Source: Macrostomum lignano
Lineage: Eukaryota
DNA length: 46,845 bases
Direction: 5' to 3'
Assembly (NCBI GenBank): GCA_002269645.1
Contig: NIVC01004410.1
Location: forward strand, 1-46,845
In this document: positions 816-38,311 of the stretch, one piece after another
Numbering within the stretch: position 1 is the stretch's first letter
Layout: the number at the start of each line of letters is the position of its first letter
Position numbers and translations under genes: made by a program
The notes under the pieces: generated by a model
Seen by the model: only the letters and a program-made list of their open reading frames with translations
What the model was told of the DNA's origin: nothing
Databases searched by the model: none

Positions 816-897
816 CGGTTATGAAACAGTATGTATATGGTGTTTCAATCACGCATGCTTTAATCTGATCTGTTTAAACAATATATTTTTGGACAGC

Positions 898-8360: not shown

Positions 8361-9173
8361 GACAGTTTAGTGGCTTACGAATGTTAGAAATTCAAAATAT
8401 GAATGTATACCCGAGCCGAATAACTGTTAAGATATTTGGGGGCCTACTACTGTCTTAAACTAGCAACTTTTTGTCCCATCTTTGAAGTATGTATATATTT
8501 GGCTGGTAAATTTCAAATACGTTTAAAAATAAAAAATAGGAGTTTGTATCGTTCGTAATTCTCAATGGTCTTTTCTTGAAAATTTAAAAATTGGGGTCTT
8601 GAATGACTCCTGGTACGAAAGGCAGTATGGGGAGAAAGTATAAGGCGCAGCAGGCGGCTTATTTACTGCCTGTAGCCTATTCTGAGCTGGGTTTTGCTTG
8701 CAGGGGGATTGTGGCACAATTTGACTTCTGCAATTTATTAAGCTCTTTTCTTTTGTTCTTTGTGGGTGCGTGTTTCCCCTATTCTTGTAATGCAGAAATA
8801 GCTATGTCGTTTTTCAGCAACTTGGTTGATCGGTGTCGGGGTCTTTTCTTTCTCGTTCTTTGTGGCTGCACTGCAGTTTAGTTGGAATTCCTGTAGAATA
8901 CCCTACCATTTGGTTCGGTACCTTATTTGATTTTTAATACAAAAATAAGGTATGTGCGTAATAAAATTTCTGACGGGTACCTTATTACGTGTTTTGCAAT
9001 TGAAAAATGGGGTATGGACGTAATTTTCTATTACTACGAGCTACTGCTGCCCCTCCCCTCAGACCCTTCAGTGGCCGCTATTCTCCTTACTTAATTAATA
9101 TTTCTACAGTGATAAAAGCCAAATAAATGTGAGCATATCTCGCCATCTCACTGCAGCGCTCAGACCAGGCATC

Positions 9174-10207
9174 ATGAACCCATTAACCCAAGTCCGCAAT
9201 CAGCGCCTGATGACTGAGAAGGAGCTCCAACTGGGCACGGCGAACACCCAAAGCTCCTGGCACTCGATGTTCAAAGACTCCGCTTGGATCTACATTGGCG
9301 GCTTGGACTATGAACTCACCGAAGGCGACGTAATCTGCGTGTTCTCCCAATACGGCGAAGTGGTCAACGTCAACCTGGTGCGGGACCAGTCCACTGGCAA
9401 GAGCAAAGGCTTCGCTTTCCTGTGCTACGAAGATCAGCGATCAACCGTGCTGGCATGCGACAACCTCAACGGAGCCCGAGTTGTGGGTCGCACTCTGCGG
9501 GTTAATCACGTGGAAAGCTACAAGGTGAAGGAGCTGATTAAACCGGACGATGATCCGGTGAAGCAGCGGCTTAAGGAGCGCGGCTGCGCGCCTGAAGTTG
9601 GACATGACGGCGATTTGAGTCCGCCTCGCCGTCGGCGCTCGCCGCCCGCCGCTCCTGGAGGCTCAGCCGCTCCTGTGCGAGTGAAGCGCGAAAAAATCGA
9701 TCCAAATTATCCGGATTACCAACCGTCTGATCGTAGCCGTAGCCGTAACGGACATCCGGGTAGCCGCGACGGACATTCGGGTAGCCGCGACGGACATCGG
9801 GTAGCCGCGACGGACATCCGGGTAGCCGCGACGGACATCCGGGTAGCCGCGACGGACATCCGGGTAGCCGCGACGGACATCCGGGTAGCCGCGACGGACA
9901 TCCGGGTAGCAAGGATCGACAAGTCGCTAGCACGAATCGTAGAAAGAATTATAGTCATAGCCGTAGCCGTAGCCGCGATGGACATCCGGGTAGCAAGGAT
10001 CGACAAGTCGCTAGCACGAATCGTAGAAAGAATTATAGTCATAGCCGTAGCCGAAGCCGTAGCCGTAGCCGCGACGGACATCCGGGCAGCAAGGATCGAC
10101 AAGTTCCTAATCCAAATCGTCGAAGAAATCGTAGCCGTAGCCGTAGCCCACCGTCCAGAAGTGACGCTGCCAGATATCGAAGGTCTACTACAAGTAGTAG
10201 AAAATAA
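9174..10207 (+). CDS. RBMX2: RBMX2/Snu17 (RES complex RRM protein) with RS-rich tail; single exon; apparent 1-bp deletion at ~9798 (as sequenced the ORF ends at 10232)
   Basis: MNPLTQV..SWHSMFKDSAWIYIGGLDYELTEGDVICVFSQYGEVVNVNLVRD..GKSKGFAFLCYEDQRST is the RBMX2 RRM; restoring CATCCG in the 21-bp GHPGSRD repeat gives an RS tail ending TAA at 10205-10207. Confidence 0.92.
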
Positions 10208-11050
10208 TTTCAGTGGTTTTGTGTCGTCATAACAACGGTTTTGACCAAGCCTCATTGACTATTGTACAGATTATGATTTTTCAATTTGAAAGTTCTATTT
10301 TTAATAGCTTGGGAGACTGATTCTACCCAAATTAGATGAAGCCGAGAGGCAGATTCTACCTATAACTTACTGCTAATAATTATTGGCATGTTTCGTTGAA
10401 ATTTAATGCCTACCGGTAATTTTGATCCAACCAGTTCTTGCTGTTATTATTAGGTTATGTTCAGATAACGGCAGTGTACTATGCATTTTACAATACTTTG
10501 GTAAATATCAAAATATACTTTAATAAAAACACATGTTCAGTACTGATATATAGTGCTCTTCTTATGTGTATTGCAAATGTAGTTATTAACGGAGTTGTTG
10601 CTCATTTATTTTTTTAAAATCTAAAATAACACCGTTCGTAACAATTTAAAGAGAGTTGCTTAGCAAAGCAATTTACTGAATATGCGATTTAAAAGGGTTA
10701 AAAAGAATGTTAATTTTCTACAGATAATGTAAACAGATTTAATCTTAGCTCACTAATACAAGCTACTTGATTTTTTTAGATTTTTTGCAGTCATGAATGA
10801 CCTAATTTAACACTTGGAAAATTTTTTACCACAAATCAGTGATGTGCCTGTCGTTTTTTAGAAACATAAAATTTCACAGAACAGCCTTCAAAAGATTTTC
10901 TAAGAAACCAAGTGGATCTCGTTTCAACACTACATGTTTATACTTAAGTCATTCTGTGTTAACTACTCGCACAGATGTAATCTTTGTCGCTGGTCTGAGT
11001 AAATTTCAAGTTAATATATTGACTGACGCGAACTATACCATATCAGATAA

Positions 11051-14000
11051 TTAGTTCCAGTACGGTCTATAATGCTCCGGTAGGCGAGGCACGTGTCTGC
11101 GCCACAGGTTTTTGTCCTCCTGCGACAGGCGAGCTACTGGCCGAAGAAAACTCTCTGTTGCTTTCCACTTTCTTGCCGGCCTTTCCGTTTCCTGCATGTG
11201 GTAATGAGGGTTGCCAGGCTACTGATTATCTAGTGAGAATTTCACGAGTATTCCGTACCTGCATTTGCTCTAATAAAATGACAGCGTGCGCTCTCCAGTC
11301 TCAACCCGTTGAAAACGGTACCGTGACAAGAATCGCTAAAAAGTCGTTGCAAACAACTTACTTGTGACTCTGGGCGACTCTTGTGACTTTTTAACGACTC
11401 AAACGCGTCAAATGCGACGGAGGCGACTTGCGTCGCAAAAGCGTAAATCATGAAAAAATTGTCCAAGAATCGTTGAGTTGGCGTTATAACTTTTGCTACA
11501 GATACGACTCTAATTCATCAAGCGACGCAAATGCGCTTTAAACACAACTCAGTGACTACAGCGACTTTAGCACGCCTCAAATACGACTCTTTACGGCACC
11601 AGAGTCGATTTCAGAGTCACAGACAACAAAACGCTTCGTGACTTCTTTGGTGACGAATTTTTGGTGACTTTAACCATTTCATCTCATCGTTTTAGAGTCG
11701 TCTAGAGTCATTTCTTTTCATTTCTTTCATTTCATTCATCACTTTCATTCATCACTTTCATTTCATTTCATTCATTTCTTTCCTATTTTGTGTTACCTGC
11801 AACGACTGTAAGGCGACGCAAGTGACTTTGGTACGCTTCTTAGCTTAGATACCGTTTTCATCGGGCAATTCATTTATCCCTGAGCTGAGATCAACAAGAA
11901 GCTTCTCCACTCTCGTCAATTTACTCCCCATCTGCTTTCTTCTCTAACTCCTTCTTTCCCCATCCATCCCAATCTTCTGTCCTGTCGCACCCTCCTCCAA
12001 TCATATCCACAGCAACAGTAGCAACTCAAACTTCTAATTTCTCCAGGCAGTTCCATACCATTGTAATAGACCGACGAAACAGCACGGCCTCGACGGTCAG
12101 CAGCGGGAAAAACAGTCTGCCGTAGCTTACAACCTTAGCAACCTTGAAGCCGCAGCTGTCGCACACTAGATCAACGCCAATTACTTCCACGCCGGGCACC
12201 CTTTTGGCTTCGCCGCCAGCTTGGCCGCGAAGTCGGCCGCCGCTGGCGAACATCTCGACATCGACAACAACCCGGTGGATGTCGCCGATTAAGCGAAGTC
12301 GAGTCGAATGTGACAGCTGAGTGAAGCACTTGCTGCACAGAATGTCGTGATCGCTGTCAAGAACTTGACCTCGGTTGTTGTTGGCCTGATTGACGTCTCC
12401 GCCTCCAGCCTCTTGGTTATCCTCATCTGTGTTCATCATTCTTACTTGATATTCGAGCATCTGCAAGCAGGAGGCATCAAAGCTGGGAGTCATACCAAAT
12501 CGACCCAATTCGGGATTATTTACATGTATATGTTAATCTCTCACCTGAATCTCCAGTTCCCTTGCTGACATGGCAGCAACGGTCCTCACCGCCTGGGACA
12601 TCATGGCATCTCGCTCCTGATTGATGCGTTCTTTATCTTTCAGCCATTCCTGCGTTTCCGCTACAATCACGTGATAGGCGCTGTTTCTGGCCCGGCCGCG
12701 GCCCTTGGTCTGCACCATGGAGACCTCGTTGGTCACGTGACAGTAGCGCACCACCAGGTTGCAGTCGGGGATGTCCAGGCCCTCCTCAGTGACGCTCGTA
12801 CAAGCGATCACTTTGTAGAGACCGCGTCGGAAGTCTTCAAGTCTGGCCCGCTGCTCAGCCGCGTTGGTGCCTCCCGTCGACTCGCCAGATGTTGCACCTG
12901 TCACGTAGGTAGCCTTAAGACGCAGTTCCGCACACTCGTCTACAAAATCGGCCAGAACGCGAGCGTAAAATTTCTGTTTTACAAAAACGATAGCGCGACT
13001 GTTTGGCTGGCCGGTGAATTGCTCGCGAAGAATTTCGACAAGCTTGTCCAGCGGTGGGCTGGACTGGAACATACGAAGGAGGAGTTCATTTTACAGGTTA
13101 ATACGAAGGTCTGGAGTCTTGCGAGTAAAGGGCATAAAAAATCAGCCTCTATGCTGTCTACCCCCATTACTTCCAAATGACTGCACTGTCAAAGAAACCC
13201 CTACTCATCCTGCGTCCATTTTTAATATACTCGTACTATCAGAACTAAAAAATCCCTAGACCCAGTAACCATGTTCCTCACCGAAGCCTCCTTTGTGCCG
13301 CAGAACCTGATCAATTGTTGCATTACGTCATCCAGATGCCGTCTCAGTCTTTCCTCAGCCTCGCTTGCCGGTGGCTTTGCCATCTCATCCTCGGTTCGCA
13401 GCTCCGTCTCCAAATAGCGCAACGCGTCCACCGCGCGAAAGCACTGCGCAATCATTTGAGCCTCGTTGCAGCAGCCAAGATACCTGCTGCAGGCTAATAT
13501 ATTCTTGCAAACGGTTTGGTCAGTGATGTTGTGCATGTTGTACTTCACGTTGGTGCAGTAGTTCAAGTACGCGGGAGTGCCTCGGGGAGGCACAGACGAC
13601 ACTGGCAGGCCTTCACTCTGCCACTGTTCAAGTGAATCGCAATAGTCGCGCAGAAGGCCCTCGCCCATGTTCATTAATCTGTTTAGCAGGTTGATAAACA
13701 CGTCGACTTTTGTTGGATCGCCAGGTGCATAGTGTATCTGGCAATCGGGATTTGATGTCACTTCATTGAGCGACTTGATGCAGCGCTGCACAGTGACTGG
13801 ATATGGGCAGTCGAGATTGGCGCACAGCTTGATTAGATGCTCCACGGCGGCCTCGAGTCGCGATGCTTTGCCGGTGCCTTGTTTGTACGAATGTTTTTAA
13901 GATGTTAGCGCATTAGACTGTGCGGTTGTACTTTTACTGGGTGTATTTAATGGCCTCTAATTAGGCTTTGAATTATCTTGAATAGCTACGGTTTTCTAGT

Positions 14001-17000
14001 GCTCTCCGTTGTAGTTCTCCAATATTCTATACATGTAGTGTCTGTTTGGAGTTCTCTAGCATCCATATTAAGGTTCGTGGAAACAACCCACTAGTGGTTC
14101 TAGCGAATGTTATTTGAAGACTCAAGCGACTGTAATGCAACTGTTGAGTCACGAGCGCATCACGTGCGAATCGTAAGAGTCGTCCAAAAGCCGTTGCGTT
14201 AGAAATTTTCTACTAACTCAAGTAGACTAAATAGATCGAGTTATTACACGTATGCTAGTAAACTGTGCAAGTCGATTCTAGTTCATAAAGTGATATGTTG
14301 AATGCTTTTTTCCTGAGCGTATTTAGCCACTCGGCAGATTTTGAAGGAAAAAAGCATTGCGGGCAAACCTCGGTGGGAAAAAAACTCGGCGGGCAATTCG
14401 CTCGCGGGCAAAATGCACTGCGGGCAAATCTCGACGGGAAAATCGTCTGCGGGCAGTTCTCATGGACCTGACTCTGAGATGCTTCTTGGCCTAGGTACCG
14501 TTTTTTTATCAATAGTGTTCTCTTAATGTCCCTTGCATTGTTTGGGTAATCTAGTATCTCTCAAGCGTCCCTTGTTACAAACTGCACTGTCTAAGTCTTT
14601 GAGGGTTTCTGGTATCCTTACTTAAACTCCCCCCTAGTGTTATCTTTTGGCTATAGTTGCTCCTAGCAGCTCTCACCTGGACTGGCCGTCAGTCCCAGAA
14701 TCTGCGGCAGCTTGCTTCCTTTCTGTTGCTCTTCAACCGACGATTCAAGAATCTTCTTTCGCCGCATATAGTGCACCATCACCCCTTTGCTTGGGTGGTC
14801 GTTTGAGCAATTGTGACACTCGTCGAAGATAATTAACCGAAATGCCGACACGCCCAGGCCGTTGAAGCTGTCGGGTTCGCGTTTCAAAGCGTTCAGCAGA
14901 ATCTGAGTGCTCATAACAATGATGGAGTGCCCCTTCAGAGCCTGGGCGAAAGGCATTCGATTTCTCGAATCCGCTCCACCGTGCACCGGCGGGCAGACGC
15001 TGTTGTGCCAAGGCGGCGGCAGGACCGAGCGGAACTCTTCGTACTGCTGCTGCACCAGGTTCGTTGTAGAGGCCAGGAATGCTACCTGAACCAAAAAATG
15101 TACAAAAAAGATGGAAACCGCGGTCCGACTTATACCCAAACATAACAGAACAAAGTTTTGCTTTTTTCACCCACCTTTGCTTGGGGCTCGGCCTTGAGCA
15201 GCCGCAGAGCGACGTACACGGCTACCAGAGTCTTCCCAGAGCCAGTGGGCGCGATCACTATCGAGTTGCGACCTAACAGGGCCGGCTCTGCCAACTCCAG
15301 CTGGTAGTCGCGGAGCTGCCGGCCGACGAGCTCGTTGTTGCCAGACGGCTGAGACCCAGGCGGCGATGGAGGCTGCTGATTGGCTATTCGCTCAAGCTTG
15401 TAAGTGTCAGAGTCGAACTTCAGTCCGTTGAGATCGAACCACCGGTTCGATTGGTCGACGACCGACTTTTTGGCCTCCTCGAACTCTGGACTCGACACCG
15501 TGTTGTAGAGCTTGGGCTGAAGCGCCGGGAGCTCTAAAATGAATGGGTGGCGATGCATTGAGACTGAGATTGATCATCCTTGAGTTCCCAATCTCAGCAA
15601 AGGTGGAGTCTTCCAGCTGCTTTTGCTCTGTGATTCAACCAGCTATTTCTGATACAATAATCTGGTCTCTCACCTGACTCGAAGTTTTGGCCGAACGGTG
15701 CAATGATGTTGAGCAGATCGACTGAGCTCTCGAGGTCAGCGATAGCAGCGAGGATGAGGTGCTCAAACCAGTCGTGAGGTGCGCAATCGATGAGCTGGCG
15801 AAGCACGCGATGGACGTCTGCGGGTTGAGGCGACAAGGGGAGATCTGGTAAGGGATCTGGAGATGGGGTCATGTGATCATGGTCATGTGACAGGAATCAG
15901 AAAGATAAATGAAAGCACCTCAGTAACACAGAAGCTCAGCAAATCAGCAACTCTGCATCTGAGCATTCTAATACCTCAGCAACTGAGCACCCCAATACCT
16001 CAGCAACTGAGCAGCCCCAACAACTCAGCAACTGAGCAGCCCCAACAACTCAGCAACTGAGCAGCCCCAACAACTCAGCAACTGATCAGCCCAATAACCC
16101 AGCAACTGAGCAGCCCAATAACTCAGCAACTGAGCAGCCCAATAACTCAGCAACTGAGCAGCCCCAATAACTCAGCAACTGAGCAGCCCAATAACCCAGC
16201 AACTGAGCAGCCCAATAACCCAGCAACTGAGCAGCCCAATAAATCAGCAACTGAGCAGCCCCAATAACTCAGCAACTGAGCAGCCCAATAACCCAGCAAC
16301 TGAGCAGCCCAATAACCTAGCAACTGAGCAGCCCAATAACTCAGCAACTGAGCAGCCCAATATCTCAGCATCTGAGCAGCCCAATATCTCAGCAACTGAG
16401 CAGCCCAATAAGCAATAACTCAGCAACTGAGCAGCCCAATAACTCAGCAACTGATCAGCCCAATAACTCAGCAACTGAGCAGCCCAATAACTCAGCAACT
16501 GATCAGCCCAATAACTCAGCAACTGAGCAGCCCAATAAGCAATAACTCAGCAACTGAGCAGCCCAATAACTCAGCAACTGATCAGCCCAATAACTCAGCA
16601 ACTGAGCAGCCCAATAACTCAGCAACTGAGCAGCCCCAATAACTCAGCAACTGAGCAGCCCCAATAACTCAGCAACTGAGCAGCCCAATAACTCAGCAAC
16701 TGAGCAGACCAATAACTCAGCAACTGAGCAGACCAATAACTCAGCAACTGAGCAGCCCCAATAACTCAGCAACTGAGCAGCCCCAATAACTCAGCAACTG
16801 AGCAGCCCAATAACTCAGCAACTGAGCAGACCAATAACTCAGCAACTGAGCAGACCAATAACTCAACAACTGAGCAGCCCCAATAACTCAGCAACTGAGC
16901 AGCCCCAATAACTCAGCAACTGAGCAGCCCCAATAACTCAGCAACTGAGCAGCCCCAATAACTCAGCAACTGAGCAGCCCCAATAACTCAGAATCTGAGC

Positions 17001-17689
17001 AGCCCACTCAGCAGCACAGCATCTCAGCTCAGCTCACGTGCTGCACTCCCGTCGCCGTCAAGATCTTCAGAAGACTTGCTGAAGTCCTGCAGTGACTGGG
17101 CGAAGACGTCTCTCTGCAGTGCTGCGGGAAGGCTGGCCGGCACTGACAACTGCAGCCGATGAAGACGCGGCAGATCCCGCCGATTGTCCAGGTGCAGAAT
17201 GTGCAGCAAGTTCTCCTGTGCTGCTGTTGCGTGGGTTCACAGGGAGATGAGTTGACATTTATTATGCTTTCTCGCATGTACAGCTCAGCATGACAGCACT
17301 TACAGCTTGTGATGCAGCGCAGAAGCTGGCTGAATGCGTCTTCGATTGGCAATTGGCCGACAACCTGCAGCAATTCGGACCAACTGCTGGGCCGATTCAT
17401 GGTAATGCCTTGAGTGGGATGAGCTGCATTGGGTGGAAATTCGATCAGGAGCAGACATTGCTGAGTAACGATAATTATTGTCAATTTCAAGAAATTTATC
17501 GATTAGATGAATTACACTTTTTACAGGTTTTCAAAGTTTAGTATTGAGGCACTCACCATTTTTAATATGATTTTCGTACACAGCCACAATATTGCCAATG
17601 TCAATTAGTCCTTCAATGTCGTCTTTAAATATATGGAAAAGAAGGCTAATAAGTCCTTCGAGTTCAACGCTTTCTTCGCCACCGTCCAT
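11051..17689 (-). CDS. RIG-I-like receptor A (2 CARD-like, DECH helicase, pincer, Zn-CTD); exons 17689-17557, 17423-17304, 17223-17038, 15817-15674, 15533-15175, 15085-14677, 13877-13282, 13063-12545, 12460-12059, 11191-11051 (1002 aa)
   Basis: LRDYQLELA (Q), APTGSGKT (I), DECH (II), GLTASPG (III), RAIVFV (IV), TSVTEEGLDIPDCNLVVRY (V), MVQTKGRGRA (VI); CTD CSKC/CDSC and RKWK; all introns GT-AG with compatible phases, total 3009 nt. RIG-I versus MDA5 orthology is not assignable. Confidence 0.9.
11305..11865. mobile_element. 561-bp MITE in RLR-A intron 9 (CCC...GGG ends, possibly CACTA/EnSpm-like)
   Basis: TIR CCCGTTGAAAACGGTA / TACCGTTTTCATCGGG (15/16); candidate 3-bp TSD CAA; many internal CGACT/GTGACT subrepeats. 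Confidence 0.6.
15905..17010. repeat. 24-25-bp minisatellite (CTCAGCAACTGAGCAGCCCAATAA) in RLR-A intron 3
   Basis: Direct periodicity; each unit contains the CTCAG-caa-CTGAG inverted repeat. Confidence 0.95.
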
Positions 17690-17868
17690 GGTTGATTGAT
17701 ATTATTTGTTGATAGGCTCAGCCGCTTTTTAGCTTATTTTTAATTAAAAACTAATTGATTAGTCCACTTGTCCGTTGTCCACTTGTCTTGCATTAACTAA
17801 CTTAGTAATGCAAAGCAATGCAGTTGCAGTGACAGAGCTGCCTCTATTTTATCACGACAGGACAGAGC

Positions 17869-17910
17869 GAAACTGAAAACTGGAAAAGGGAAAGATTTCT
17901 TGGAAATTCC
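17869..17910 (-). promoter_or_regulatory. ISRE/IRF-like sites plus kappaB-like site, 180-221 bp upstream of the RLR-A ATG
   Basis: + strand GAAACTGAAAACTGGAAAAGGGAAAG...GGAAATTCC fits GAAANNGAAA and GGRNWTYCC. Confidence 0.55.
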
Positions 17911-18409
17911 GAGCGCGCGCGGAGGGTATGGCCACCAGTTCTAAAAATAGATTTTATTTGGATATAACCAATGTACACTGGGAGTCTACGTTCATCCCGC
18001 AAGCTAAATGTACATTTCATTGCGTACAAGAGTGAATTTGAGGTCTATGCCCTTTTTCATTTCAAATCTTATTTTTTTGCTCTGGTTCTTTCTATACACA
18101 CATTAAAGCAGCCTTGCAATAATTTCATTTCCATTTCTGCTTGTGCTTTCCTATCAAAGTGCTGTGGTACTCTACTCTGTCTATTGTCCTTCCTGACTCC
18201 GAGTAAATTATGTTCAGTAGTTTCATGCATGATTTTTGTGTTTGTTTTAGATAACATAACAATCAATAAGCGTAATGGCACTTAAACTCTAGAATTTATT
18301 TGTTAGTAACGAATTCACCGATTGTAATCAAGTTACATGACTTATGAGTATCTAGTCGTGGAACAGTCAGCTACTTTAGGGTGTAGAAACTGGTTGAAGT
18401 AGGTGCCGG

Positions 18410-18845
18410 TCCTCCTCTCTCCCTACCCTACCTCTCCCTTGACTCCCTACCTCCCTACCTCACTCCATACCTCTCTCCCTACCTACCTCTATCTCTCTCC
18501 CTACCTCTCTCCCTACATCTCTCCCTACCTCTCTTCCTAAATCTCTCCCTACCTCTCTCTATCTCTCTTCCTACCTCTCTCCCTACATCTCTCCCTTACC
18601 TCTCTCCTGACCCCCTACCTCTCTTCCTATCTCTCTCCCTACATCTCTCCCTACCTCTCTATCTCTCTCCCGACCTCTCTCCCTACATCTTTCCCTTCCT
18701 ACCTCTCCCTACCTCTCTCTACCTCTCTCTATCTTTCTCCCTACATCTCTCCCTACATCTCTACCTCTCTCCCTAGCTCTCCCTACCTCTCTCTATCTCT
18801 ACTTCCCGACATCTCTCCCTACATCTCTCCCGACCTCTCTCCTAA
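18410..18845. repeat. CT-rich degenerate microsatellite (CCTACCTCTCTC-like) in the spacer between the RLR genes
   Basis: Direct inspection; strong pyrimidine strand bias. Confidence 0.9.
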
Positions 18846-19696
18846 TTGTGTAAACTAATTGTATAATAACCTGATCAATTTTAATGAAATAGCAAGTATT
18901 GCAAAAAGTGTTGAAAAATGGGAACTTTTCCAAGGAAACTTGGGTATTTTTTTAAGAAATTAGACAATTTTTTTCTATAACCGACATGTATTTTAATAGA
19001 GAAGTACAACAACTTAGTAAGAACTGGTGAAATTTACGAGTTGGAGAGAAAAATTGGCCGATATGTATCACATGGGCGTCGCCACAGGCGAGACAGAGGG
19101 GACATAATCCCCCAGTAGAAGCTAAGGGGGGCATGTCAAATACTTTGTCCCCCCATACGTCATTTCACCTTGTAACTTGCTATGGAAACCAATAATTTTG
19201 CTTCAGGGCGCCAAAATATAGCGGCTTCAGCGCCAAAATGAGTGACTGCGGCCCCAAAATGAGTGCCAAACAACACCGATGTTTAGCATAACGTATGAAA
19301 ACATAGTAGTCTACTTACAGTAGAGATAAGAAATCTGTTTCACTTATACTTCACAAACACCCAGGGATTAAAATTCAATAATATTTCAGCATTTTACACT
19401 TAGTAATGCAATTACAATTTAACACCGAGCCCAGGAAATGTTGGCAGCTTGGCCAACATGGTGAACAGTTGGCTGGTCTGGTCACCAGAGATTTCTTTTT
19501 CCAATGAAAAATCATTTAAAAGCTGTGATTTCCAACACGGCAGATACATGTAAATTTTGTACAAGTTTGGCTGGACACTTTTTGGGGGATTCGGAAAATT
19601 TGCAAAACCCTAAACAACCCGAAAATCCTTTCCCGAACTCCGATCCCGATCCCAAATCCCAACCCCGAAACCTAACCACTCCTAGTGAACGTAGAC

Positions 19697-21119
19697 CGGG
19701 GGTCAGCAAACTCCGGCCCGAGGGTCACATGCGGCCCGGCCCGCAATGCCTCACTATCCGGCCCTCGGGTCCATGGACACTTTAAAATGGCAATCCGGCC
19801 CGCTCAAGGTTTGTGTCTTCTCAGTTGTCTCTTCTCTTCTCTTCTCTTTTCTTTCCTCTCAGTTTCTCTTCTTTTCTCTCTCCTCTCCTCTTCTCTCCTC
19901 TACTCTCTCCTCTACTCTCTCCTCTTCTCTCCTCTACTCTCTCCTCTACTCTCTCCTCTTCTCTCCTCTACTCTCTCCTCTACTCTCCTCTTCTCTCCTC
20001 TACTCTCTCCTCTACTCTCTCCTCTTCTCTCCTCTACTCTCTCCTCTACTCTCCTCTTCTCTCCTCTACTCTCTCCTCTACTCTCCTCTTCTCTCCTCTA
20101 CTCTCTCCTCTACTCTCCTCTTCTCTCCTCTACTCTCTCCTCTACTCTCCTCTTCTCTCCTCTACTCTCTCCTCTTCTCTCCTCTTCTCTGCTCTACTCT
20201 CTCCTCTTCTCTCCTCTTCTCTCCTCTACTCTCTCCTCTACTCTCCTCTTCTCTCCTCTACACTCTCCTCTTCTCTCCTCTACTCTCTCCTCTACTCTCT
20301 CCTCTTCTCTCCTCTACTCTCTCCTCTACTCTCCTCTTCTCTCCTCTACTCTCTCCTCTACTCTCTCCTCTTCTCTCCTCTACTCTCTCCTCTACTCTCC
20401 TCTTCTCTCCTCTACTCTCTCCTCTACTCTCTCCTCTTCTCTCCTCTACTCTCTCCTCTACTCTCTCCTCTACTCTCTCCTCTTCTCTCCTCTCCTCTCT
20501 CCTCTACTCTCCTCTTCTCTCCTCTACTCTCTCCTCTACTCTCCTCTTCTCTCCTCTACTCTCTCCTCTACTCTCCTCTTCTCTCCTCTACTCTCTCCTC
20601 TTCTCTCCTCTTCTCTGCTCTACTCTCTCCTCTTCTCTCCTCTTCTCTCCTCTACTCTCTCCTCTACTTTCCTCTTCTCTCCTCTACTCTCTCCTCTTCT
20701 CTCCTCTACTCTCTCCTCTACTCTCCTCTTCTCTCCTCTACTCTCTCCTCTACTCTCCTCTTCTCTCCTCTACTCTCTCCTCTACTCTCCTCTTCTCTCC
20801 TCTACTCTCTCCTCTACTCTCCTCTTCTCTCCTCTACTCTCTCCTCTACTCTCCTCTTCTCTCCTCTACTCTCTCCTCTACTCTCCTCTTCTCTCCTCTC
20901 CTCTCCTCTCATCTCCTCTCCTCTCCCCTCTCATCTAATCTCTTCTCTCATAGCATCTCTCATCTCGCTTCTTACCTCTCCTCTCTCCTGTCATCTCTCA
21001 TCTCCTCTTACTTCTCTCTCGCCAATCCCTCTCCTCTCCACTCTCATCTGGCCCACAGGCCACAGCCATGAGCTAGATTCTTTACCTGACCCCCGAGGTA
21101 AAAAGTTTGCTAACCCCTG
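19697..21119. mobile_element. Non-autonomous hAT element/MITE with a ~1.2-kb internal CT microsatellite expansion (19830-21045)
   Basis: TIRs CGGGGGTCAGCAAAC / GTTTGCTAACCCCTG; perfect 8-bp TSD ACGTAGAC (19689-19696, 21120-21127); CGGCCC subterminal motifs. Confidence 0.85.
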
Positions 21120-21193
21120 ACGTAGACGCTCAGTGTACATTGGTATGTAGAATCTATTTTTAGAACTGGTGGCCATACCCTCCGCGCGCGCTC

Positions 21194-21235
21194 GGAATTT
21201 CCAAGAAATCTTTCCCTTTTCCAGTTTTCGGTTTC
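21194..21235 (+). promoter_or_regulatory. kappaB-like site plus ISRE/IRF-like sites, 180-221 bp upstream of the RLR-B ATG
   Basis: GGAATTTCC...CTTTCCCTTTTCCAGTTTTCGGTTTC (reverse complement GAAACCGAAAACT). Confidence 0.55.
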
Positions 21236-21414
21236 GCTCTGTCCTGTCGTGATAAAATAGAGGCAGCTCTGTCACTGCAACTGCATTGCTTTGCATTACT
21301 AAGTTAGTTAATGCAAGACAAGTGGACAACGGACAAGTGGACTAATCAATTAGTTTTTAATTAAAAATAAGCTAGAAAGCGACTAAGCCTATCAACAAAT
21401 AATATCAATCAACC

Positions 21415-24400
21415 ATGGACGGTGGCGAAGAAAGCGTTGAACTCGAAGGACTTATTAGCCTTCTTTTCCATATATTTAAAGACGACATTGAAGGACTAAT
21501 TGACATTGGCAATATTGTGGCTGTGTACGAAAATCATATTAAAAATGGTGAGTGCCTCAATACTAAACTTTGAAAACCTGTAAAAAGTGTAATTCATCTA
21601 ATCGATAAATTTATTGAAATTTGACAATAATTATCGTTACTCAGCAATGTCTGCTCCTGATCGAATTTCCACCCAATGCAGCTCATCCCACTCAAGGAAT
21701 TACCATGAATCGGCCCAGCAGTTGGTCCGAATTGCTGCAGGTTGTCGGCCAATTGCCAATCGAAGACGCATTCAGCCAGCTTCTGCGCTGCATCACAAGC
21801 TGTAAGTGCTGTCATGCTGAGCTGTACATGCGAGAAAGCATAATGAATGCCAACTCATCTCCCTGTGAACCCACGCAACAGCAGCACAGGAGAACTTGCT
21901 GCACATTCTGCACCTGGACAATCGGCGGGATCTGCCGCGTCTTCATCGGCTGCAGTTGTCAGTGCCGGCCAGCCTTCCCGCAGCACTGCAGAGAGACGTC
22001 TTCGCCCAGTCACTGCAGGACTTCAGCAAGTCTTCTGAAGATCTTGACGGCGACGGGAGTGCAGCACGTGAGCTGAGCTGAGATGCTGTGCTGCTGAGTG
22101 GGCTGCTCAGATTCTGAGTTATTGGGGCTGCTCAGTTGCTGAGTTATTGGGCTGCTCAGATGCTGAGATATTGGGCTGCTCAGTTGCTGAGTTATTGGGC
22201 TCCTCAGTTGCTGAGTTATTGGGCTGCTCAGTTGCTGAGTTATTGGGCTGCTCAGATGCTGAGATATTGGGGCTGCTCAGTTGCTGAGTTATTGGGGCTG
22301 CTCAGTTGCTGATTTATTGGGCTGCTCAGATTCTGAGTTATTGGGGCTGCTCAGATGCTGGGTTATTGGGCTGCTCAGTTGCTGAGTGGGCTGCTCAGTT
22401 GCTGAGTTATTGGGCTGCTCAGTTGCTGAGTTGTTGGGGCTGCTCAGTTGCTGAGTTATTGGGCTGCTCAGATGCTGAGTTGTTGGGCTGCTCAGATGCT
22501 GAGTCATTGGGCTGCTCAGATGCTGAGTTATTGGGCTGCTCAGTTGCTGAGGTATTGGGGTGCTCAGTTGCTGAGTTATTGGGCTCCTCAGTTGCTGAGT
22601 TATTGAGCTGCTCAGTTGCTGAGTCATTGGGGCTGCTCAGTTGCTGAGTTGTTGGGGCTGCTCAGTTGCTGAGTTGTTGGGGCTGCTCAGTTGCTGAGGT
22701 ATTGGGGTGCTCAGTTGATGAGGTATTGGGGTGCTCAGTTGCTGAGGTATTAGAATGCTCAGATGCAGAGTTGCTGATTTGCTGAGCTTCTGTGTTACTG
22801 AGGTGCTTTCATTTATCTTTCTGATTCCTGTCACATGACCATGATCACATGACCCCATCTCCAGATCCCTTATCAGATACCCCCTCATGTCGCCTCAACC
22901 CGCAGACGTCCATCGCGTGCTTCGCCAGCTCATCGATTGCGCACCTCACGACTGGTTTGAGCACCTCATCCTCGCTGCGATCGCTGACCTCGAGAGCTCA
23001 GTCGATCTGCTCAACATCATTGCACCGTTCGGCCAAAACTTCGAGTCAGGTGAGAGACCAGATTATTGTATCAGAAATAGCTGGTTGAATCACAGAGCAA
23101 AAGCAGCTGGAAGACTCCACCTTTGCTGAGATTGGGAACTCAAGGATGATCAATCTCAGTCTCAATGCATCGCCACCCATTCATTTCAGAGCTCCCGGCG
23201 CTTCAGCCCAAGCTCTACAACACGGTGTCGAGTCCAGAGTTCGAGGAGGCCAAAAAGTCGGTCGTCGACCAATCGAACCGGTGGTTCGATCTCAACGGAC
23301 TGAAGTTCGACTCTGACACTTACAAGCTTGAGCGAATAGCCAATCAGCAGCCTCCATCGCCGCCTGGGTCTCAGCCGTCTGGCAACAACGAGCTCGTCGG
23401 CCGGCAGCTCCGCGACTACCAGCTGGAGTTGGCAGAGCCGGCCCTGTTAGGTCGCAACTCGATAGTGATCGCGCCCACTGGCTCTGGGAAGACTCTGGTA
23501 GCCGTGTACGTCGCTCTGCAGCTGCTCAAGGCCGAGCCCCAAGCGAAGGTCAGTGCTGAAAGCAATAAATTTATCATACCACACAACATAATGGCAGTGG
23601 GAATAAAATGGAGACAGCGGAGTTCACAATTGCCGTCAGCGCTGGTTTACAAGACGATGTCGCCGATTGCTTTGCACCAGTGTGCCAAGTGCCATGTTTC
23701 ATGTTAAATGTTTGAACATTTGCCCCATTTTCAAACGCCATAATATCTTAGGTGGCACTTCTGGCATCCACTAATCAGCTGGTTCAGCAGCAATACGACA
23801 AGTTCAGGTCCGCCCTGCCCTCACCTTGGCGGGACAGAGTTGACCTAATTCTGGGAGGCAAAGACAACAAGAATCGAAAGCCATTCGCCCTGTCTATGAA
23901 GAAAAACTCCATCCTGGTCATTAGCACCCAAATTCTATTAAACGAGCTTGATAGAAAAACAGTTGCGAACATTTCCGATTTCCGCCTCATCATATTCGAC
24001 GAATGCCACAATTGTGCAAAGAGCCACGCCAGTATGAAAGTGATGATGCACTACCTGCGACTGAAGAGAGATCTGGAACAAGAGAATCAATCGGGAAGAT
24101 TCTTGCCGCGGATTCTTGGGCTAACGGCCAGTCCAGGTAAAATGCTAGAAAGGCATGAATTATTAAATTCTTGTTTTTAAGCTATTTCACGTCTAACGAT
24201 GCCTGATCTGTTCATTGTGTCTGATCTGTAAGGACACTCAATGTCCATTGTGTCTGATCTGTAGGGACACTACTGTCCATTGTGTCTGATCTGTAAGGAC
24301 ACTACTGTCTATTGCGTCTGATCTGTAAGGACACTCAATGTCCATTGTGTCTGATCTGTACGGACACTACTGTCCATTGTGTCTGATCTGTAAGGACACT

Positions 24401-27400
24401 ACTGTCTATTGTGTCTGATCTGTAAGAACACAACTGTCCATTGTGTCTGATCTGTAAGAACACAACTGTCCATTGTGTCTGATCTGTAAGAACACTACTG
24501 TCCATTGTGTCTGATCTGTAGGGACACAACTGTCCATTGTGTCTGATCTGTAAGGACACAACTGTCCATTGTGTCTGATCTGTAAGAACACAACTGTCCA
24601 TTGTGTCTGATCTGTAAGAACACTACTGTCCATTGTGTCTGATCTGTAGGGACACAACTGTCCATTGTGTCTGATCTGTAAGGACACAACTGTCCATTGT
24701 GTCTGATCTGTAAGGACACTACTGTCTATTGTGTCTGATCTGTAAGGACACTCAATTTCCATTGTGTCTGATCTGTAAGAACACAACTGTCCATTGTGTC
24801 TGATCTGTAAGAACACAACTGTCCATTGTGTCTGATCTGTAAGAACACAACTGTCCATTGTGTCTGATCTGTAAGGACACTACTGTCTATTGCGTCTGAT
24901 CTGTAAGGACACTACTGTCTATTGCGTCTGATCTGTAAGGACACTCAATGTCCATTGTGTCTCATCTGTAAGGACGCTACTGCCAGTGGACAAAACGCCA
25001 ATTAAACACCCAAAACATTCAAACGTCCAAAAAACCTGCACCTCAAGGCACCGGCAAAGCCAAGGGACCAGAGGATGCCAAGGAGCATCTTGTTCAACTG
25101 TGCGCCAATCTTGACTGCCCCTACCCTGTCACTGTGCAGCGCTATCTTCAGTCACTATTTAAATTTAACTCAGATCAAGACTGTCAAATCCTCTCGGTAC
25201 CTGCTAAACAGAGCTCGGAAGACGTATTCATTAAATTTTTAAACGAGCTGATGGACCTTGGGGAGAAGCTGCTATATAGCAATCGGAGCTCGCTGCTAAA
25301 CTCAGAGCCGGAAGCCCTCCAGATTGCATCAGCGCCGCCAAGAGGCACTCCAACTTACACAAACTACTGCTCCGATGTTAAGTACAAAATTCACCAAGTG
25401 GCAGACGAAGAGATGGGCAAAGATCTGTTCGCCTGTAGTCGTTATCTGGACACATTCAATCAAGCGTATATGATTGCGCAGTTCTACAATCCCCGAGGTG
25501 CGTGGCGCTACATCAAGAAAGAACTTCGAGCTGTGGACGAACTGGCTAAGCCCCCAGTCTGCGAGGCGGAGAGTCAACTGCGGCAGCGACTGCATAGCCT
25601 GATCGGGCCGCTAGAAAGATTCTGCGACACCAAAGAAGCTTCGGTAAGTTTGTTATTGAGTGCATTTAGCCAAATGCAACGTTCCATTATTTTGATGACT
25701 GGTTTATCGCTTGCAGTCGAGTCCTCCGCTGGACAAATTCGTGGAAATCCTTCGCAACCAGTTCAACTCGCAAGCCGACTCGCGAGCGATTGTTTTCGTA
25801 CAACGGAAAATCTACGCTCAGGTGATTACTGAGTTCTTAAACGAGCAACTACCGCATCTACCGGCTGCCTATGTGACTGGCGCAACTTCAAGCGACGCTT
25901 CCGGAGGCACTAATGCTTCTGAGCAGCAGGCTCGCATTGAGGGCTTCCGGCAAGGCGACTACAAAGTGATTGCTTGCACCAGTATGGCGGAAGAAGGCCT
26001 AGACATACCGGACTGCAACCTGGTGGTGCGCTACTGTCACGTGACAAACGAAATCGCCATGGTGCAGACCAAAGGCCGGTGCCGGGCCAAAAACAGCGCC
26101 TATTACGTGATTGTAGCTGAGACACAGGAGGCGCTGCGTCACAAGGAACGCGAAAATGAGCTGCGCGATGCAATGATGCAGCAATCAGTGGCGTGCGTTA
26201 CTGATTTAACGACTGAAGAGTTGGTAGTCAAGGTGAGAATCTTTCAGTTTTTTGTCGACAGTTTCAATCGCTGTGTTGACTTAAGGACAACTTTGTTTTT
26301 CTCTGTGCTGTGCCTCTTCGAGAGTTATAGCCAGGGACTACTATAACATCGAGACGGGAAACTAGGCAAATCATGGCAAAGTTTTTACGAGGCTGGTTTG
26401 CGAGGTTTACGAGGATCTTTGAGTAGTCCCTGGTTTTATAGCCTAGTGAGGACTCATGACTAGAAGGTCGGGTTTTCGAATCTCTACCCACTCGGAACAA
26501 TTCGTGACAAAGATACTTAACTTTACATTTTTTTAGTTTACCCAGCTAGCTGTAAAGTGGATGCCAGCATTAGCTGGGGTAATTGAGGGTGGGTGGCGAC
26601 CCCCCAGTCCTTTGACTGAACAGCCGTACGCAGCCTTCAGATGCGCCGCGCAATAGCTGCGGCTGAGCTGTCGGTTGCACATCTGGTCATTAGGGCAGGT
26701 GTAATCAATTATAGACGATTAAAGTTATGAATTCTCTTCTCTGATTCTCTTCTTTACGAGTTCTTGTGCATTATTAATGTTGGGTGTGGCCATAGACGAT
26801 TCAGTTGCACACACACCCATGCAGCCATGAGCTAAAGAAGCAATGCTTCAAGCTGGGAAAATAAAAAAGAAGGTTACGATAACATGAAATAAGACGCTCG
26901 GTTAAGAGAGCAAATACTTAAGAGGTCTTGGCTCACTGTCTTCCGCTAGAGAAGAAGTCATAAGAATTAGATTTGTTAAAATTCTTTTAGCCTTCTATAA
27001 GCTTTATACGCTACTGCTATAAGCTTTCAATTGCAGATGCTGGATTACCAGGAAAAGGCGCTGAAAGACGAAGAGGAAAAACGTGCTAATAATAGCACAC
27101 CTATCGGAAGTGACGTCATCATTGATAGCGACCACGAAATTCTGTGCCGCAAGTGTGAAAAAAAACTGTCGGATTCGACTCGGCTTCGATTGATTTGCGG
27201 AATCCATCGCGTCGTCCTGGATGCCGACATGTTCATTGGAGGTCAACGCATTGTTGGTCAACATGGAGGCGAGATCAAAAAGGTTCCCGGAATGGATATG
27301 ATTGGTGTGGATTTGCTGTGCGGCTACTGCAGCTACGGACCTGTGGCTAAAATTGCTCGCTACAAAGGCCAATTTTTCCCTTTGTTGGACCCGGAATGCG

Positions 27401-28195
27401 TCTGTTTTCGCCGATTGAATGACAAGGTAAGACTTCTATAGTTGGTATTGAAATTCTGTTCATTTAGAACGCAAATGAAATAAAATATGTAAATACTGAG
27501 CCTGTAAGAACATGTACGGTCATGTCAAGGCTTACGGGGAGAATTGCTGAGATGTCAAGGCTGATGGGGAGAATTGCTGAGATGTCAAGGCTTACGGGGA
27601 GAATTGCTGAGATGTCAAGGCTTACGGGGAGAATTGCTGAGATGTCAAGGCTTACGGGGAGAATTGCTGAGATGTCAAGGCTTACGGGGAGAATTGCTGA
27701 GATGTCAAGGCTTACGGGGAGAATTGCTGAGATGTCAAGGATGAGAGGTCAGAAGCTACATGTGGTTTATTCAAAAAATGATTCTATTTTTTGTTGCCTT
27801 TTTAAAGGGGGCGCTGATTGCTAGCAGTCACTATCGGCCCTAAAAGACGGCCTCAGCATTTCAATAATTTACCCCCATATGAGCCTTGACATCCGAGCAA
27901 TCCCCCATAAGCTATTGACATCTCAGCAATGAAACAATGCAGCAGTGAAAGTGTAAAAGCCTAACGAATTACCTCGGAAGGAATCGATCATGGCCGGAAG
28001 ATAATGGATCGCAACACCTTTCCTCATTTACTTTAGAAATTGGAAAAACAGGTGAGAAAGTGGAAACATACAAAATCCTTCCTTCGCGATGTTGCTGAGC
28101 TGAGCAGTGACGATAGAGACTACTGGCGTCGGGCAGTTCCGCGTCTGCCCAGACAGTACCGAGCTGCGGCAGTTCGAGGCGGAGCGCATCGTTAA
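21415..28195 (+). CDS. RIG-I-like receptor B; exons 21415-21547, 21682-21801, 21882-22067, 22906-23049, 23190-23548, 23752-24136, 25048-25643, 25717-26232, 27037-27426, 28037-28195 (995 aa)
   Basis: Same motifs (APTGSGKT, DECH, GLTASPG, TSMAEEGLDIPDCNLVVRY, QTKGRCRA; CTD CRKC/CGYC, RKWK); same intron positions and phases as RLR-A (1,1,1,1,0,1,0,0,0); total 2988 nt. Confidence 0.9.
22085..22790. repeat. 24-25-bp minisatellite in RLR-B intron 3 (inverted, shorter counterpart of 15905-17010)
   Basis: Unit TTATTGGGCTGCTCAGTTGCTGAG. Confidence 0.95.
24215..24980. repeat. 32-bp minisatellite in RLR-B intron 6
   Basis: Unit TGTCCATTGTGTCTGATCTGTAAGGACACAAC, ~24 copies. Confidence 0.95.
26430..26500 (+). 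mobile_element. Possible decayed tRNA-derived SINE head in RLR-B intron 8
   Basis: A-box-like TAGCCTAGTG and B-box-like GGTTTTCGAATC about 30 bp apart; no clean cloverleaf. Confidence 0.25.
27522..27740. repeat. 30-bp minisatellite in RLR-B intron 9, with degenerate inverted copies at ~27855-27930
   Basis: Unit ATGTCAAGGCTTACGGGGAGAATTGCTGAG x7; GAGCCTTGACAT and TTGACATCTCAGCAAT occur downstream. Confidence 0.85.
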
Positions 28196-38287: not shown

Positions 38288-38311
38288 CTGAGTAGAGAAA
38301 TTGCAGTTATT

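What the first reader, a model, noticed from the sequence alone, without database searches (positions are those of the whole stretch)
17869..21235. ISRE-like plus kappaB-like enhancer module upstream of both RLRs
Seen: GAAACTGAAAACTGGAAAAGGGAAAG-N7-GGAAATTCC at 17869-17910 and its mirror at 21194-21235, each 180-221 bp from the ATG. The SNP between them (GAAACTGAAA vs GAAACCGAAA) falls in the spacer and keeps GAAANNGAAA. Established: tandem GAAA cores are IRF sites, vertebrate RLRs are ISRE-driven, and the IFN-beta enhancer has adjacent IRF and GGGAAATTCC kappaB sites. Inference: an interferon-like IRF/NF-kB feed-forward loop drives these sensors in an invertebrate. The two copies are not independent evidence because they lie in the duplicated arm.
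Basis: partly seen in the sequence, partly recalled or inferred. Interest (0 to 1): 0.72.

Follow-up and report, generated by a model that had tools for sequence, protein, structure and literature searches.

The report
ISRE-like promoter module, flatworm RLR pair
Two head-to-head RIG-I-like RNA-sensor genes of the flatworm Macrostomum lignano share a short promoter carrying sequences that resemble vertebrate IRF, STAT and NF-kB binding sites. The motifs are really there and sit in a plausible position, but nothing available here shows that they work.

Summary
GAAAC[T/C]GAAAACTGGAAAAGGGAAAG-N7-GGAAATTCC lies 180-221 nt upstream of the ATG of each of two divergently transcribed RIG-I-like receptor genes of Macrostomum lignano. 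It sits 16 nt distal to a TATA-like box, so it probably spans about -40 to -95 from the transcription start. The composite is improbable under shuffling (about 0.7% of shuffled windows), but that test was chosen after seeing the motif.

No independent support could be obtained:
- The module is intact in all six promoter copies on three contigs, but those promoters are 96-99% identical throughout, so there is no footprint.
- A third RLR paralogue and a truncated copy lack it.
- No orthologous promoter from another species was available.

The "kB" 9-mer fails the 10-bp GGGRNNYYCC consensus and overlaps a perfect STAT-type palindrome (TTCTTGGAA).

Published work shows IRFs in other flatworms. It reports no clear NF-kB in planarians, no TLRs in M. 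lignano, and eroded NF-kB upstream signalling in flatworms.

An IRF-responsive inducible promoter is the best reading, at about 0.35. The NF-kB arm and the feed-forward loop are unsupported. If functional, this is a new member of a known kind, and it can be tested with existing M. lignano transgenesis.

The parts
17869..17894 (+). Left copy of the ISRE/IRF-E-like tandem GAAA tract, GAAACTGAAAACTGGAAAAGGGAAAG. The purine strand is antisense to the left gene. It holds two full AANNGAAA sites plus two extra GAAA cores.
17897..17905 (.). Left copy of the STAT/GAS-type palindrome TTCTTGGAA (TTCN3GAA). It lies inside the 5-3-5 palindrome ATTTC-TTG-GAAAT and overlaps the kB-like 9-mer.
17902..17910 (.). 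Left copy of the Rel/kB-like 9-mer GGAAATTCC. It matches NGGRNWTTCC but not GGGRNNYYCC.
21194..21202 (.). Right copy of the Rel/kB-like 9-mer (GGAATTTCC on the + strand).
21199..21207 (.). Right copy of the GAS-type palindrome (TTCCAAGAA on the + strand).
21210..21235 (-). Right copy of the ISRE/IRF-E-like tract. On the - strand it reads GAAACCGAAAACTGGAAAAGGGAAAG.
17845..17852 (-). TATA-like box ATAAAATA of the left gene, 16 nt proximal to the module.
   Evidence: read directly; its function is inferred
21252..21259 (+). TATA-like box ATAAAATA of the right gene. The predicted TSS is about 21275-21290 (inference).
11054..17689 (-). Left RLR gene (BOX15_Mlig016200g2, P0002, 1001 aa). Exon 1 is 17555-17689.
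21415..28195 (+). Right RLR gene (BOX15_Mlig021912g2, P0122, 994 aa). Exon 1 is 21415-21549.
15158..17995 (.). Left arm of the inverted duplication or conversion tract. It covers the promoter from about -310, exons 1-5 and the introns, including a 24-nt minisatellite.
21120..23565 (.). Right arm of the inverted duplication or conversion tract.
19697..21119 (.). TE-like insertion with 16-nt imperfect terminal inverted repeats and an 8-bp target duplication (ACGTAGAC). It carries the CT-rich minisatellite and bounds the right promoter at about -296.

Best explanation
The 42-nt module is part of a compact, TATA-containing proximal promoter of about 310 nt. Two head-to-head RLR paralogues of Macrostomum lignano share this promoter and keep it alike by duplication or gene conversion.

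Its proximal half (GAAAC[C/T]GAAAACTGGAAAAGGGAAAG) most likely binds one or more IRF-family proteins through AANNGAAA sites and makes transcription of both sensors inducible.

The distal half is the overlapping palindromes TTCTTGGAA and GGAAATTCC. It is more likely read by a dimeric STAT-type or Rel-homology (NFAT5- or Rel-like) factor than by a canonical NF-kB.

Shown: the sequences, their position, the identity of the genes and the copy structure. Inferred: the TSS, which proteins bind, inducibility, and any feedback from the RLRs to those factors.
For: - The motif is present exactly as described.
- The core GAAACCGAAA equals the core of the mammalian ISG15 ISRE (own knowledge) and matches 11 of 12 positions of the IRF-E consensus G(A)AAA[G/C][T/C]GAAA[G/C][T/C].
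- The ISRE core is enriched in the window and the composite is rare in shuffles.
- GGAAWTTCC is found nowhere else in about 100 kb of non-redundant M. lignano DNA held here.
- The module lies 16 nt distal to a TATA-like box and 180-221 nt from the ATG.
- It lies inside the about 310 nt that are the only upstream sequence the two genes share. The spacer beyond is variable, TE- and minisatellite-filled, and differs between genomic copies.
- In six copies the two substitutions inside the module hit degenerate positions, while the 29 nt just distal carry six substitutions and one indel.
- Flatworm IRFs with a DNA-binding domain and an IAD exist in Schistosoma, with a planarian homologue (PMC2194728; PMC13563047).
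- Oyster IRFs activate mammalian ISRE and IFN-beta reporters, and oyster RLR-pathway genes respond to poly(I:C) (PMC5557890).
- IRF, STAT, NF-kB and ETS motifs are enriched near poly(I:C)-induced genes in Nematostella (PMC8476169).
Against: - There is no independent conservation. The six promoters are 96-99% identical over the whole -320 to +650 region, and SNP density in the module (2 in 42) is no lower than downstream (4 substitutions and 2 indels in 186 columns).
- The third RLR (L002) and a truncated copy (L005) have neither motif in 10 kb upstream.
- The locus is rich in purine/pyrimidine low-complexity sequence, so shuffles understate chance.
- The motif was found by eye among many possible vertebrate motifs.
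- The TSS is not mapped, and 38.8% of M. lignano genes are trans-spliced (PMC5730564).
- M. lignano IRF, STAT and Rel genes could not be checked.
- The planarian IRF-like gene showed no effect in the one functional assay published (PMC13563047).
Confidence: 0.35

Rival explanations
1. The resemblance is chance. The tract is a purine-rich low-complexity stretch plus two short palindromes in a repeat-rich genome. It was carried along in a recently duplicated arm and has no specific regulatory role.
For: GAAA clusters are about 100-fold more common in the real window than in shuffles (7 against 0.05), and 39 tandem-repeat rows show how repeat-rich the window is. Short 4-1-4 and 5-3-5 palindromes are expected every few hundred bases. 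Conservation among copies is explained entirely by recent duplication. Paralogues lack the motif. The motif was selected after the fact.
Against: The near-exact IRF-E core, the adjacent 9-mer that is unique in about 100 kb, and placement right next to a TATA-like box of an antiviral sensor gene are jointly unlikely. Both SNPs spare the core positions.
Confidence: 0.3
2. The element is a real cis-element but is not an interferon-like IRF/NF-kB circuit. It would be read by other GGAA/GAAA-recognising factors (ETS, STAT, NFAT5) and would control tissue-specific or stress expression of the RLRs.
For: TTCTTGGAA is a perfect TTCN3GAA/TTCYNRGAA site overlapping the kB-like 9-mer. TGGAAAA and GGAA cores fit NFAT and ETS (own knowledge). 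NFAT5 is the well-conserved RHD protein in planarians, while NF-kB is not clearly present (PMC13563047). M. lignano lacks TLRs (PMC8609888), and flatworms lack several NF-kB upstream components (PMC4894443).
Against: The GAAANNGAAA spacing is the hallmark of IRF sites rather than ETS or NFAT sites. IRFs are retained in flatworms (PMC2194728). The presence of STAT or ETS genes in M. lignano was not tested either.
Confidence: 0.2
3. The module lies inside the primary transcript, in a 5'UTR or in an outron removed by SL trans-splicing. It is then not an upstream promoter element.
For: 38.8% of M. lignano genes are trans-spliced and the TSS is unmapped here (PMC5730564). A CTAAT...T-rich...AAG stretch lies between the TATA-like box and the ATG.
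Against: A TATA-like box lies 16 nt proximal to the module, with an initiator-like CA about 25-30 nt further on. The homologous arm ends only about 90 nt distal to the module, and beyond it lie a TE and minisatellites. That leaves little room for another shared promoter.
Confidence: 0.1

Closest known systems
Vertebrate ISRE / IRF-E of interferon-stimulated genes (e.g. the ISG15 ISRE GGGAAACCGAAACTG), and the IRF-1 site in the human RIG-I (DDX58) proximal promoter
   Same: Tandem GAAA cores with a 2-nt spacer (GAAACCGAAA is identical to the ISG15 core). Proximal position next to the core promoter of an RNA-sensor gene. Works in either orientation. (The vertebrate elements are from own knowledge; the sequence is.)
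   Different: The 3' flank is GAAAACT instead of GAAACT. Two further GAAA cores follow with non-canonical spacing. The organism has no interferon. No binding or induction data exist.
IFN-beta enhancer (PRDIII-I IRF sites next to PRDII GGGAAATTCC)
   Same: IRF-type repeats and a GGAAATTCC-containing site lie within about 40 nt, immediately upstream of a TATA box.
   Different: The order is inverted, with the kB-like site distal. The first G of PRDII is missing (TGGAAATTCC; it fails GGGRNNYYCC). No shared ATF-2/c-Jun-type site is present. It controls a sensor gene, not a cytokine gene.
Composite GAS/kB element of the mammalian IRF1 promoter (own knowledge)
   Same: A STAT palindrome physically overlaps a Rel-type site. 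This is exactly the geometry of TTCTTGGAAATTCC here.
   Different: The sequence differs. STAT and Rel factors are not demonstrated in M. lignano.
Lophotrochozoan and cnidarian IRF-driven antiviral programmes (oyster CgIRF2/8 on ISRE reporters, PMC5557890; the oyster cGAS/STING-TBK1-IRF axis, title of PMC8218723, seen only in the search listing; motif enrichment in Nematostella poly(I:C)-induced genes, PMC8476169)
   Same: An invertebrate without interferon has an RLR pathway, and IRF-type motifs or factors are implicated in induction.
   Different: Those cases have expression or reporter data. Here there is only sequence, in a phylum where the downstream pathway (MAVS, NF-kB, cGAS, TLR) appears strongly reduced.

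Membership tests
ISRE / IRF-E (IRF-binding element) | Tandem GAAA cores spaced by 2 nt (GAAANNGAAA; AANNGAAA half-sites) | tested here: met
   GAAAC[T/C]GAAA plus AAGGGAAA are present. The site matches 11 of 12 positions of IRF-E. The full ISRE RNGAAANNGAAACT is missed by one inserted A.
ISRE / IRF-E (IRF-binding element) | Located upstream of the transcription start of the regulated gene | tested here: inconclusive
   The module is 16 nt distal to a TATA-like box and 180-221 nt from the ATG. The TSS is not mapped, and trans-splicing is common in this species.
ISRE / IRF-E (IRF-binding element) | Conserved in orthologous or paralogous promoters beyond the background | tested here: inconclusive
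   The module is intact in 6 of 6 copies, but the promoters are 96-99% identical throughout. It is absent upstream of the third RLR and the truncated copy. No other species' promoter was available.
ISRE / IRF-E (IRF-binding element) | An IRF protein exists in the organism and binds the site; the gene is induced by dsRNA or virus | not testable with these tools
   Homology searches list only the best 120 hits, with no taxon filter. Published work shows IRFs in Schistosoma and planarians only.
NF-kB (kB) site | 10-bp GGGRNNYYCC | tested here: not met
   The site reads TGGAAATTCC, and the consensus scan returns no match at 17901-17910 or 21194-21203.
NF-kB (kB) site | 9-bp Rel-homodimer type NGGRNWTTCC / GGAAATTCC | tested here: met
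   GGAAATTCC is present at both promoters and nowhere else in the held M. lignano loci.
NF-kB (kB) site | A Rel/NF-kB factor and an activating pathway are present in the organism | not testable with these tools
   Published work points against it: no clear NF-kB in planarians, no TLRs in M. lignano, and RIPK, NIK and caspase-10 lost in flatworms.
GAS (STAT-binding) element | Palindrome TTCN3GAA | tested here: met
   TTCTTGGAA at 17897-17905 and 21199-21207. Ten independent TTCN3GAA sites occur in the window, counted once per palindrome (20 when both strands are listed), so the motif is not rare.
Heat-shock element | Contiguous inverted nGAAn units (GAAnnTTC / TTCnnGAA) | tested here: not met
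   The spacings are GAA-A-TTC (1 nt) and TTC-TTG-GAA (3 nt), read.
RIG-I-like receptors (the two flanking genes) | DExD/H helicase with a DECH motif, Hel2i/pincer region, Helicase_C, and a C-terminal RD with four zinc-binding Cys | tested here: met
   Pfam gives DEAD, ResIII, RIG-I_C, Helicase_C and RIG-I_C-RD. The best named homologues are mollusc and vertebrate RIG-I, MDA5 and LGP2. D401, E402, C403, H404 and C863, C866, C924 are invariant, and C921 is nearly invariant (at least 90%). The AF2 model matches LGP2, RIG-I and MDA5 with TM about 0.8.
RIG-I-like receptors (the two flanking genes) | N-terminal tandem CARDs (needed for MAVS-type signalling, and hence for a feed-forward loop) | tested here: inconclusive
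   There is no Pfam CARD in the first 266 aa, and only a faint CARD_2 hit (E = 0.018) in relative P0003. The AF2 model shows two helical bundles at residues 4-93 and 101-228, with pLDDT 55-82. The single-sequence model was unusable.

The most novel reading that the evidence does not exclude
A flatworm that has lost TLRs and probably canonical NF-kB signalling still runs an interferon-independent, IRF-driven positive-feedback circuit on its RLR sensors. The circuit would act through an enhanceosome-like composite promoter (IRF sites plus an overlapping STAT/Rel palindrome) of about 90 nt. Gene conversion would keep that promoter identical on two divergently transcribed paralogues.
Probability: 0.15. 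Interest if true: 0.55.

Novelty: new member of a known kind. Interest (0 to 1): 0.3.

Why it matters
Almost nothing is known about transcriptional control of antiviral genes in Platyhelminthes. Published surveys report no TLRs, no clear NF-kB and, in planarians, no cGAS, so RLRs are among the few conserved nucleic-acid sensors left.

A working IRF-type element on M. lignano RLR promoters would extend the IRF-ISG logic known from vertebrates, oysters and sea anemones to flatworms. It would also give a compact, about 320-bp candidate inducible promoter for a species with working transgenesis.

Routine dsRNA soaking for RNAi in this animal might itself induce these genes, which would matter to anyone using that method.

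As it stands, this is an attractive but untested motif match.

Tried and rejected
- Heat-shock-element reading: rejected because the spacings are wrong.
- Captured viral or TE promoter: the 26-mer has no exact match in the viral contig collection or elsewhere in the held loci.
- Structured RNA or tRNA in the intergenic region: none found.
- Footprinting across genomic copies: there are three contigs and six promoters, but they are too similar.
- Paralogue comparison: L002 (third RLR) and L005 (truncated copy) lack the motifs. L003 (P0005/P0006, an ENA metagenome contig of unknown organism) is not a usable orthologue.
- Search for proteins sharing the RLR N-terminal domain, to find a MAVS-like partner and more promoters: it returned nothing, not even the source proteins, so it is uninformative.
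- Pfam on the N-terminus: no CARD. Single-sequence AF2 of the N-terminus: pLDDT 40, unusable.
- Literature search for IRF, Rel or STAT genes or dsRNA-response data in M. lignano: nothing specific. Supplementary gene tables of two M. lignano papers have no IRF, DDX58 or IFIH1 entries, and the one NFKB2 entry is an ankyrin-repeat match.
- A direct homology search for an M. lignano IRF was not run. The tool lists only the 120 best hits with no taxon filter, so vertebrate or mollusc IRFs would fill the list.
- The sigma-70 promoter and terminator scan is irrelevant for a eukaryote.
Full report
**Observation.** GAAACTGAAAACTGGAAAAGGGAAAG-ATTTCTT-GGAAATTCC lies at 17869-17910 on the + strand. Its reverse complement at 21194-21235 carries GAAACCGAAA. 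The start codons are at 17689 (- strand) and 21415 (+ strand), so both modules lie 180-221 nt upstream of an ATG. The only difference between the two copies is the C/T in the NN spacer.

**What the locus is.**
- The exons on the right carry DEAD/ResIII, RIG-I_C, Helicase_C and RIG-I_C-RD domains.
- A protein search identifies the organism as the free-living flatworm Macrostomum lignano, assembly GCA_002269645.1, and the window is a whole 46,845-bp contig.
- The left gene is BOX15_Mlig016200g2 (P0002, 1001 aa, 11054-17689, - strand). The right gene is BOX15_Mlig021912g2 (P0122, 994 aa, 21415-28195, + strand).
- Both are genuine RIG-I-like receptors. DECH and three of the four C-terminal zinc cysteines (C863, C866, C924) are invariant in an alignment with 43 RLRs, and the fourth (C921) is nearly invariant.
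- An AlphaFold model (mean pLDDT 80) superposes on LGP2, RIG-I and MDA5 structures with TM about 0.8.
- The first about 315-330 residues of the two proteins are essentially identical and the rest is 56% identical. A 96-99% identical inverted tract, about 15158-17995 and 21120-23565, covers the promoter, five exons and the introns. This looks like gene conversion or a recent partial duplication between older head-to-head paralogues.

**Copies and conservation.** The same head-to-head pair occurs on two further contigs (L001 and L004). This fits the known redundancy of the DV1 assembly (PMC5730564). All six promoters carry the module (alignment A1).

| Region (gene orientation) | Length | Variation among six copies |
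|---|---|---|
| Just distal to the module | 29 nt | 6 substitutions, 1 indel |
| Module | 42 nt | 2 substitutions, both at degenerate positions (GAAAC[T/C]GAAA; GAAAA[C/G]TGG) |
| Module to ATG | 186 columns | 4 substitutions, 2 indels |

That pattern is compatible with constraint on the cores but has no statistical weight. The whole -320 to +650 region is 96-99% identical between any two copies. Left copies cluster together, and so do right copies.

No orthologue from another species with genomic flank was found. The third M. lignano RLR (P0004, L002) and a truncated copy (P0126, L005) have neither GAAANNGAAA nor GGAAWTTCC in the 10 kb upstream.

**Chance.**
- GAAANNGAAA occurs 7 times in the window against 2.05 expected, and no shuffle reaches 7.
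- The 9-mer GGAAWTTCC occurs only at the promoters. About 27% of shuffles contain at least one.
- The pair within 50 nt appears in 0.7% of shuffles.
- The real sequence has about 100-fold more GAAA clusters than shuffles, because the contig is packed with low-complexity repeats, and the hypothesis was formed after looking.
- The strict kB consensus GGGRNNYYCC is neither matched at the site nor enriched.

**Anatomy.** In gene orientation the promoter reads, from distal to proximal:

| Element | Note |
|---|---|
| GGAATTTCC | Rel-type 9-mer |
| Overlapping TTCCAAGAA | Perfect TTCN3GAA STAT palindrome, part of a 5-3-5 palindrome |
| 26-nt pyrimidine tract | Complement holds two full IRF half-site pairs (AACCGAAA, AAGGGAAA) and two more GAAA cores |
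| 16-nt gap | |
| ATAAAATA | TATA-like box; the ATG lies about 156 nt further on |

If the TATA-like box is used, the TSS is near 21275-21290 (mirror: about 17815-17830). The module then spans about -40 to -95. This is inference; the TSS was not mapped.

The module sits in the distal third of the about 310 nt that are the only upstream sequence the two genes share. Beyond that, the spacer holds a TE-like insertion with an 8-bp target duplication and CT-rich minisatellites, and it differs between genomic copies by kilobase indels. A heat-shock-element reading fails on spacing. The "kB" site can equally be read as a STAT site or, with the TGGAAA cores, as an NFAT-type site.

**Trans-acting factors.** I could not query the M. 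lignano proteome for IRF, Rel or STAT genes, because the homology tool lists only the best 120 hits with no taxon filter.

Published work gives the following:
- Schistosoma mansoni has an IRF with a DNA-binding domain and an IAD-like C-terminus, and a planarian homologue exists (PMC2194728).
- Schmidtea has a diverged IRF3/4-like gene, seven divergent RHD genes and a conserved NFAT5. It has no clear NF-kB and no cGAS, and knockdown of the IRF-like gene had no effect in the one assay reported (PMC13563047).
- M. lignano has no TLRs (PMC8609888).
- Flatworms, including M. lignano, lack RIOK3. Flatworms also lack caspase-10, RIPK and NIK (PMC4894443).
- Oyster IRFs activate mammalian ISRE and IFN-beta reporters, and oyster RLR-pathway genes respond to poly(I:C) (PMC5557890).
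- STAT, IRF, NF-kB and ETS motifs are enriched near poly(I:C)-induced genes in Nematostella (PMC8476169).

The IRF half therefore has a reasonable prior and the NF-kB half a poor one.

The feed-forward idea also needs the RLRs to signal. Pfam finds no CARD in their N-termini. The model shows two helical bundles of moderate confidence that could be divergent death-fold domains. This stays open.

**Mechanism and rivals.**
- Best reading (about 0.35): a compact inducible promoter in which IRF-family proteins bind the tandem GAAA tract and a dimeric STAT- or RHD-type factor binds the overlapping palindrome, giving coordinated induction of both sensors.
- Chance low-complexity sequence (about 0.3).
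- A real element used by other GGAA/GAAA-binding factors, unrelated to an interferon-like loop (about 0.2).
- Location inside the transcript or outron (about 0.1).

**Comparison with known systems.** The module works like, and looks like, a vertebrate ISRE/IRF-E. The core GAAACCGAAA equals the ISG15 core (own knowledge). Loosely, it also resembles the IRF plus kB part of the IFN-beta enhancer, with the order inverted and an imperfect kB site. The overlap of the GAS-type and Rel-type palindromes recalls the composite GAS/kB element of the mammalian IRF1 promoter (own knowledge). Membership in "functional ISRE" cannot be granted, because binding, induction and independent conservation are all untested. 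Membership in "canonical kB site" fails the 10-bp consensus.

**Verdict.** If functional, this is a new member of a known kind, not a new kind of system. It is worth a modest follow-up, because M. lignano has RAMPAGE data, routine dsRNA treatment and working transgenesis, so the hypothesis is cheap to test.

Noticed in passing
window 19697-21119: TE-like insertion. Imperfect terminal inverted repeats CGGGGGTCAGCAAACT / AGTTTGCTAACCCCTG are flanked by an 8-bp direct repeat ACGTAGAC (19689-19696 and 21120-21127), which is hAT-like. Its interior is the CT-rich minisatellite 19829-20948. It is present in all three genomic copies and bounds the right promoter at about -296.
   Followed up: partly
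window 15158-17995 and 21120-23565: The two RLR paralogues are 96-99% identical over the promoter, exons 1-5 and the introns, but only 56% identical at protein level downstream. This is a sharp conversion or duplication boundary inside the helicase domain. Left copies and right copies from three contigs each cluster by side.
   Followed up: partly
window 21317-21327 and 21332-21342 (mirror in the left 5' region): An 11-nt direct repeat GACAAGTGGAC occurs twice between the TATA-like box and the ATG and is invariant in all six copies. It could be another factor site or a 5'UTR element.
   Followed up: no
window 21118-21125: A CRE/ATF-like TGACGTAG is created at the junction of the TE end and its target duplication. 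It occurs in the right promoter only (the left promoter reads TGAACGTAG).
   Followed up: no
P0002 residues 1-266 (window exons 17689 down to about 15300): The RLR N-terminus has no Pfam domain. AF2 predicts two helical bundles (residues 4-93 and 101-228) that may be very divergent CARDs. A homology search with this region returned nothing, not even P0002 itself.
   Followed up: partly
window 15949-17006 and 22099-22772: A 24-nt minisatellite (AACTCAGCAACTGAGCAGCCCAAT; 43 and 28 copies) lies inside the same intron of both genes. Copy number differs between the arms and between contigs.
   Followed up: no
window 41298-46845; also 1-819, 38311-39994, 35005-35746: Tandem-repeat load is extreme. 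A 118-nt unit repeated 47 times at 99% identity runs off the contig end, and there are many 19-48-nt minisatellites.
   Followed up: no
L001 1300-3582 against window 18256-18262: The intergenic spacer differs between genomic copies by an indel of about 2.3 kb. The shared promoter arms are unaffected.
   Followed up: no
L005 (NIVC01001153.1) 10001-12624: A truncated RLR copy (Mlig006916g1, 484 aa; Helicase_C plus RD only) is flanked on both sides by RRM genes and by an RNase P p30 gene. The window also has an RRM-type ORF at 9129-10232, so this may be a paralogous segment.
   Followed up: no
window 889-1815: An ORF ends in a C3HC4 RING-finger-like motif (CKICMD...CPVCR), preceded by an 18-nt minisatellite that encodes a repetitive N-terminus. 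It may be an E3 ligase gene and was not examined.
   Followed up: no
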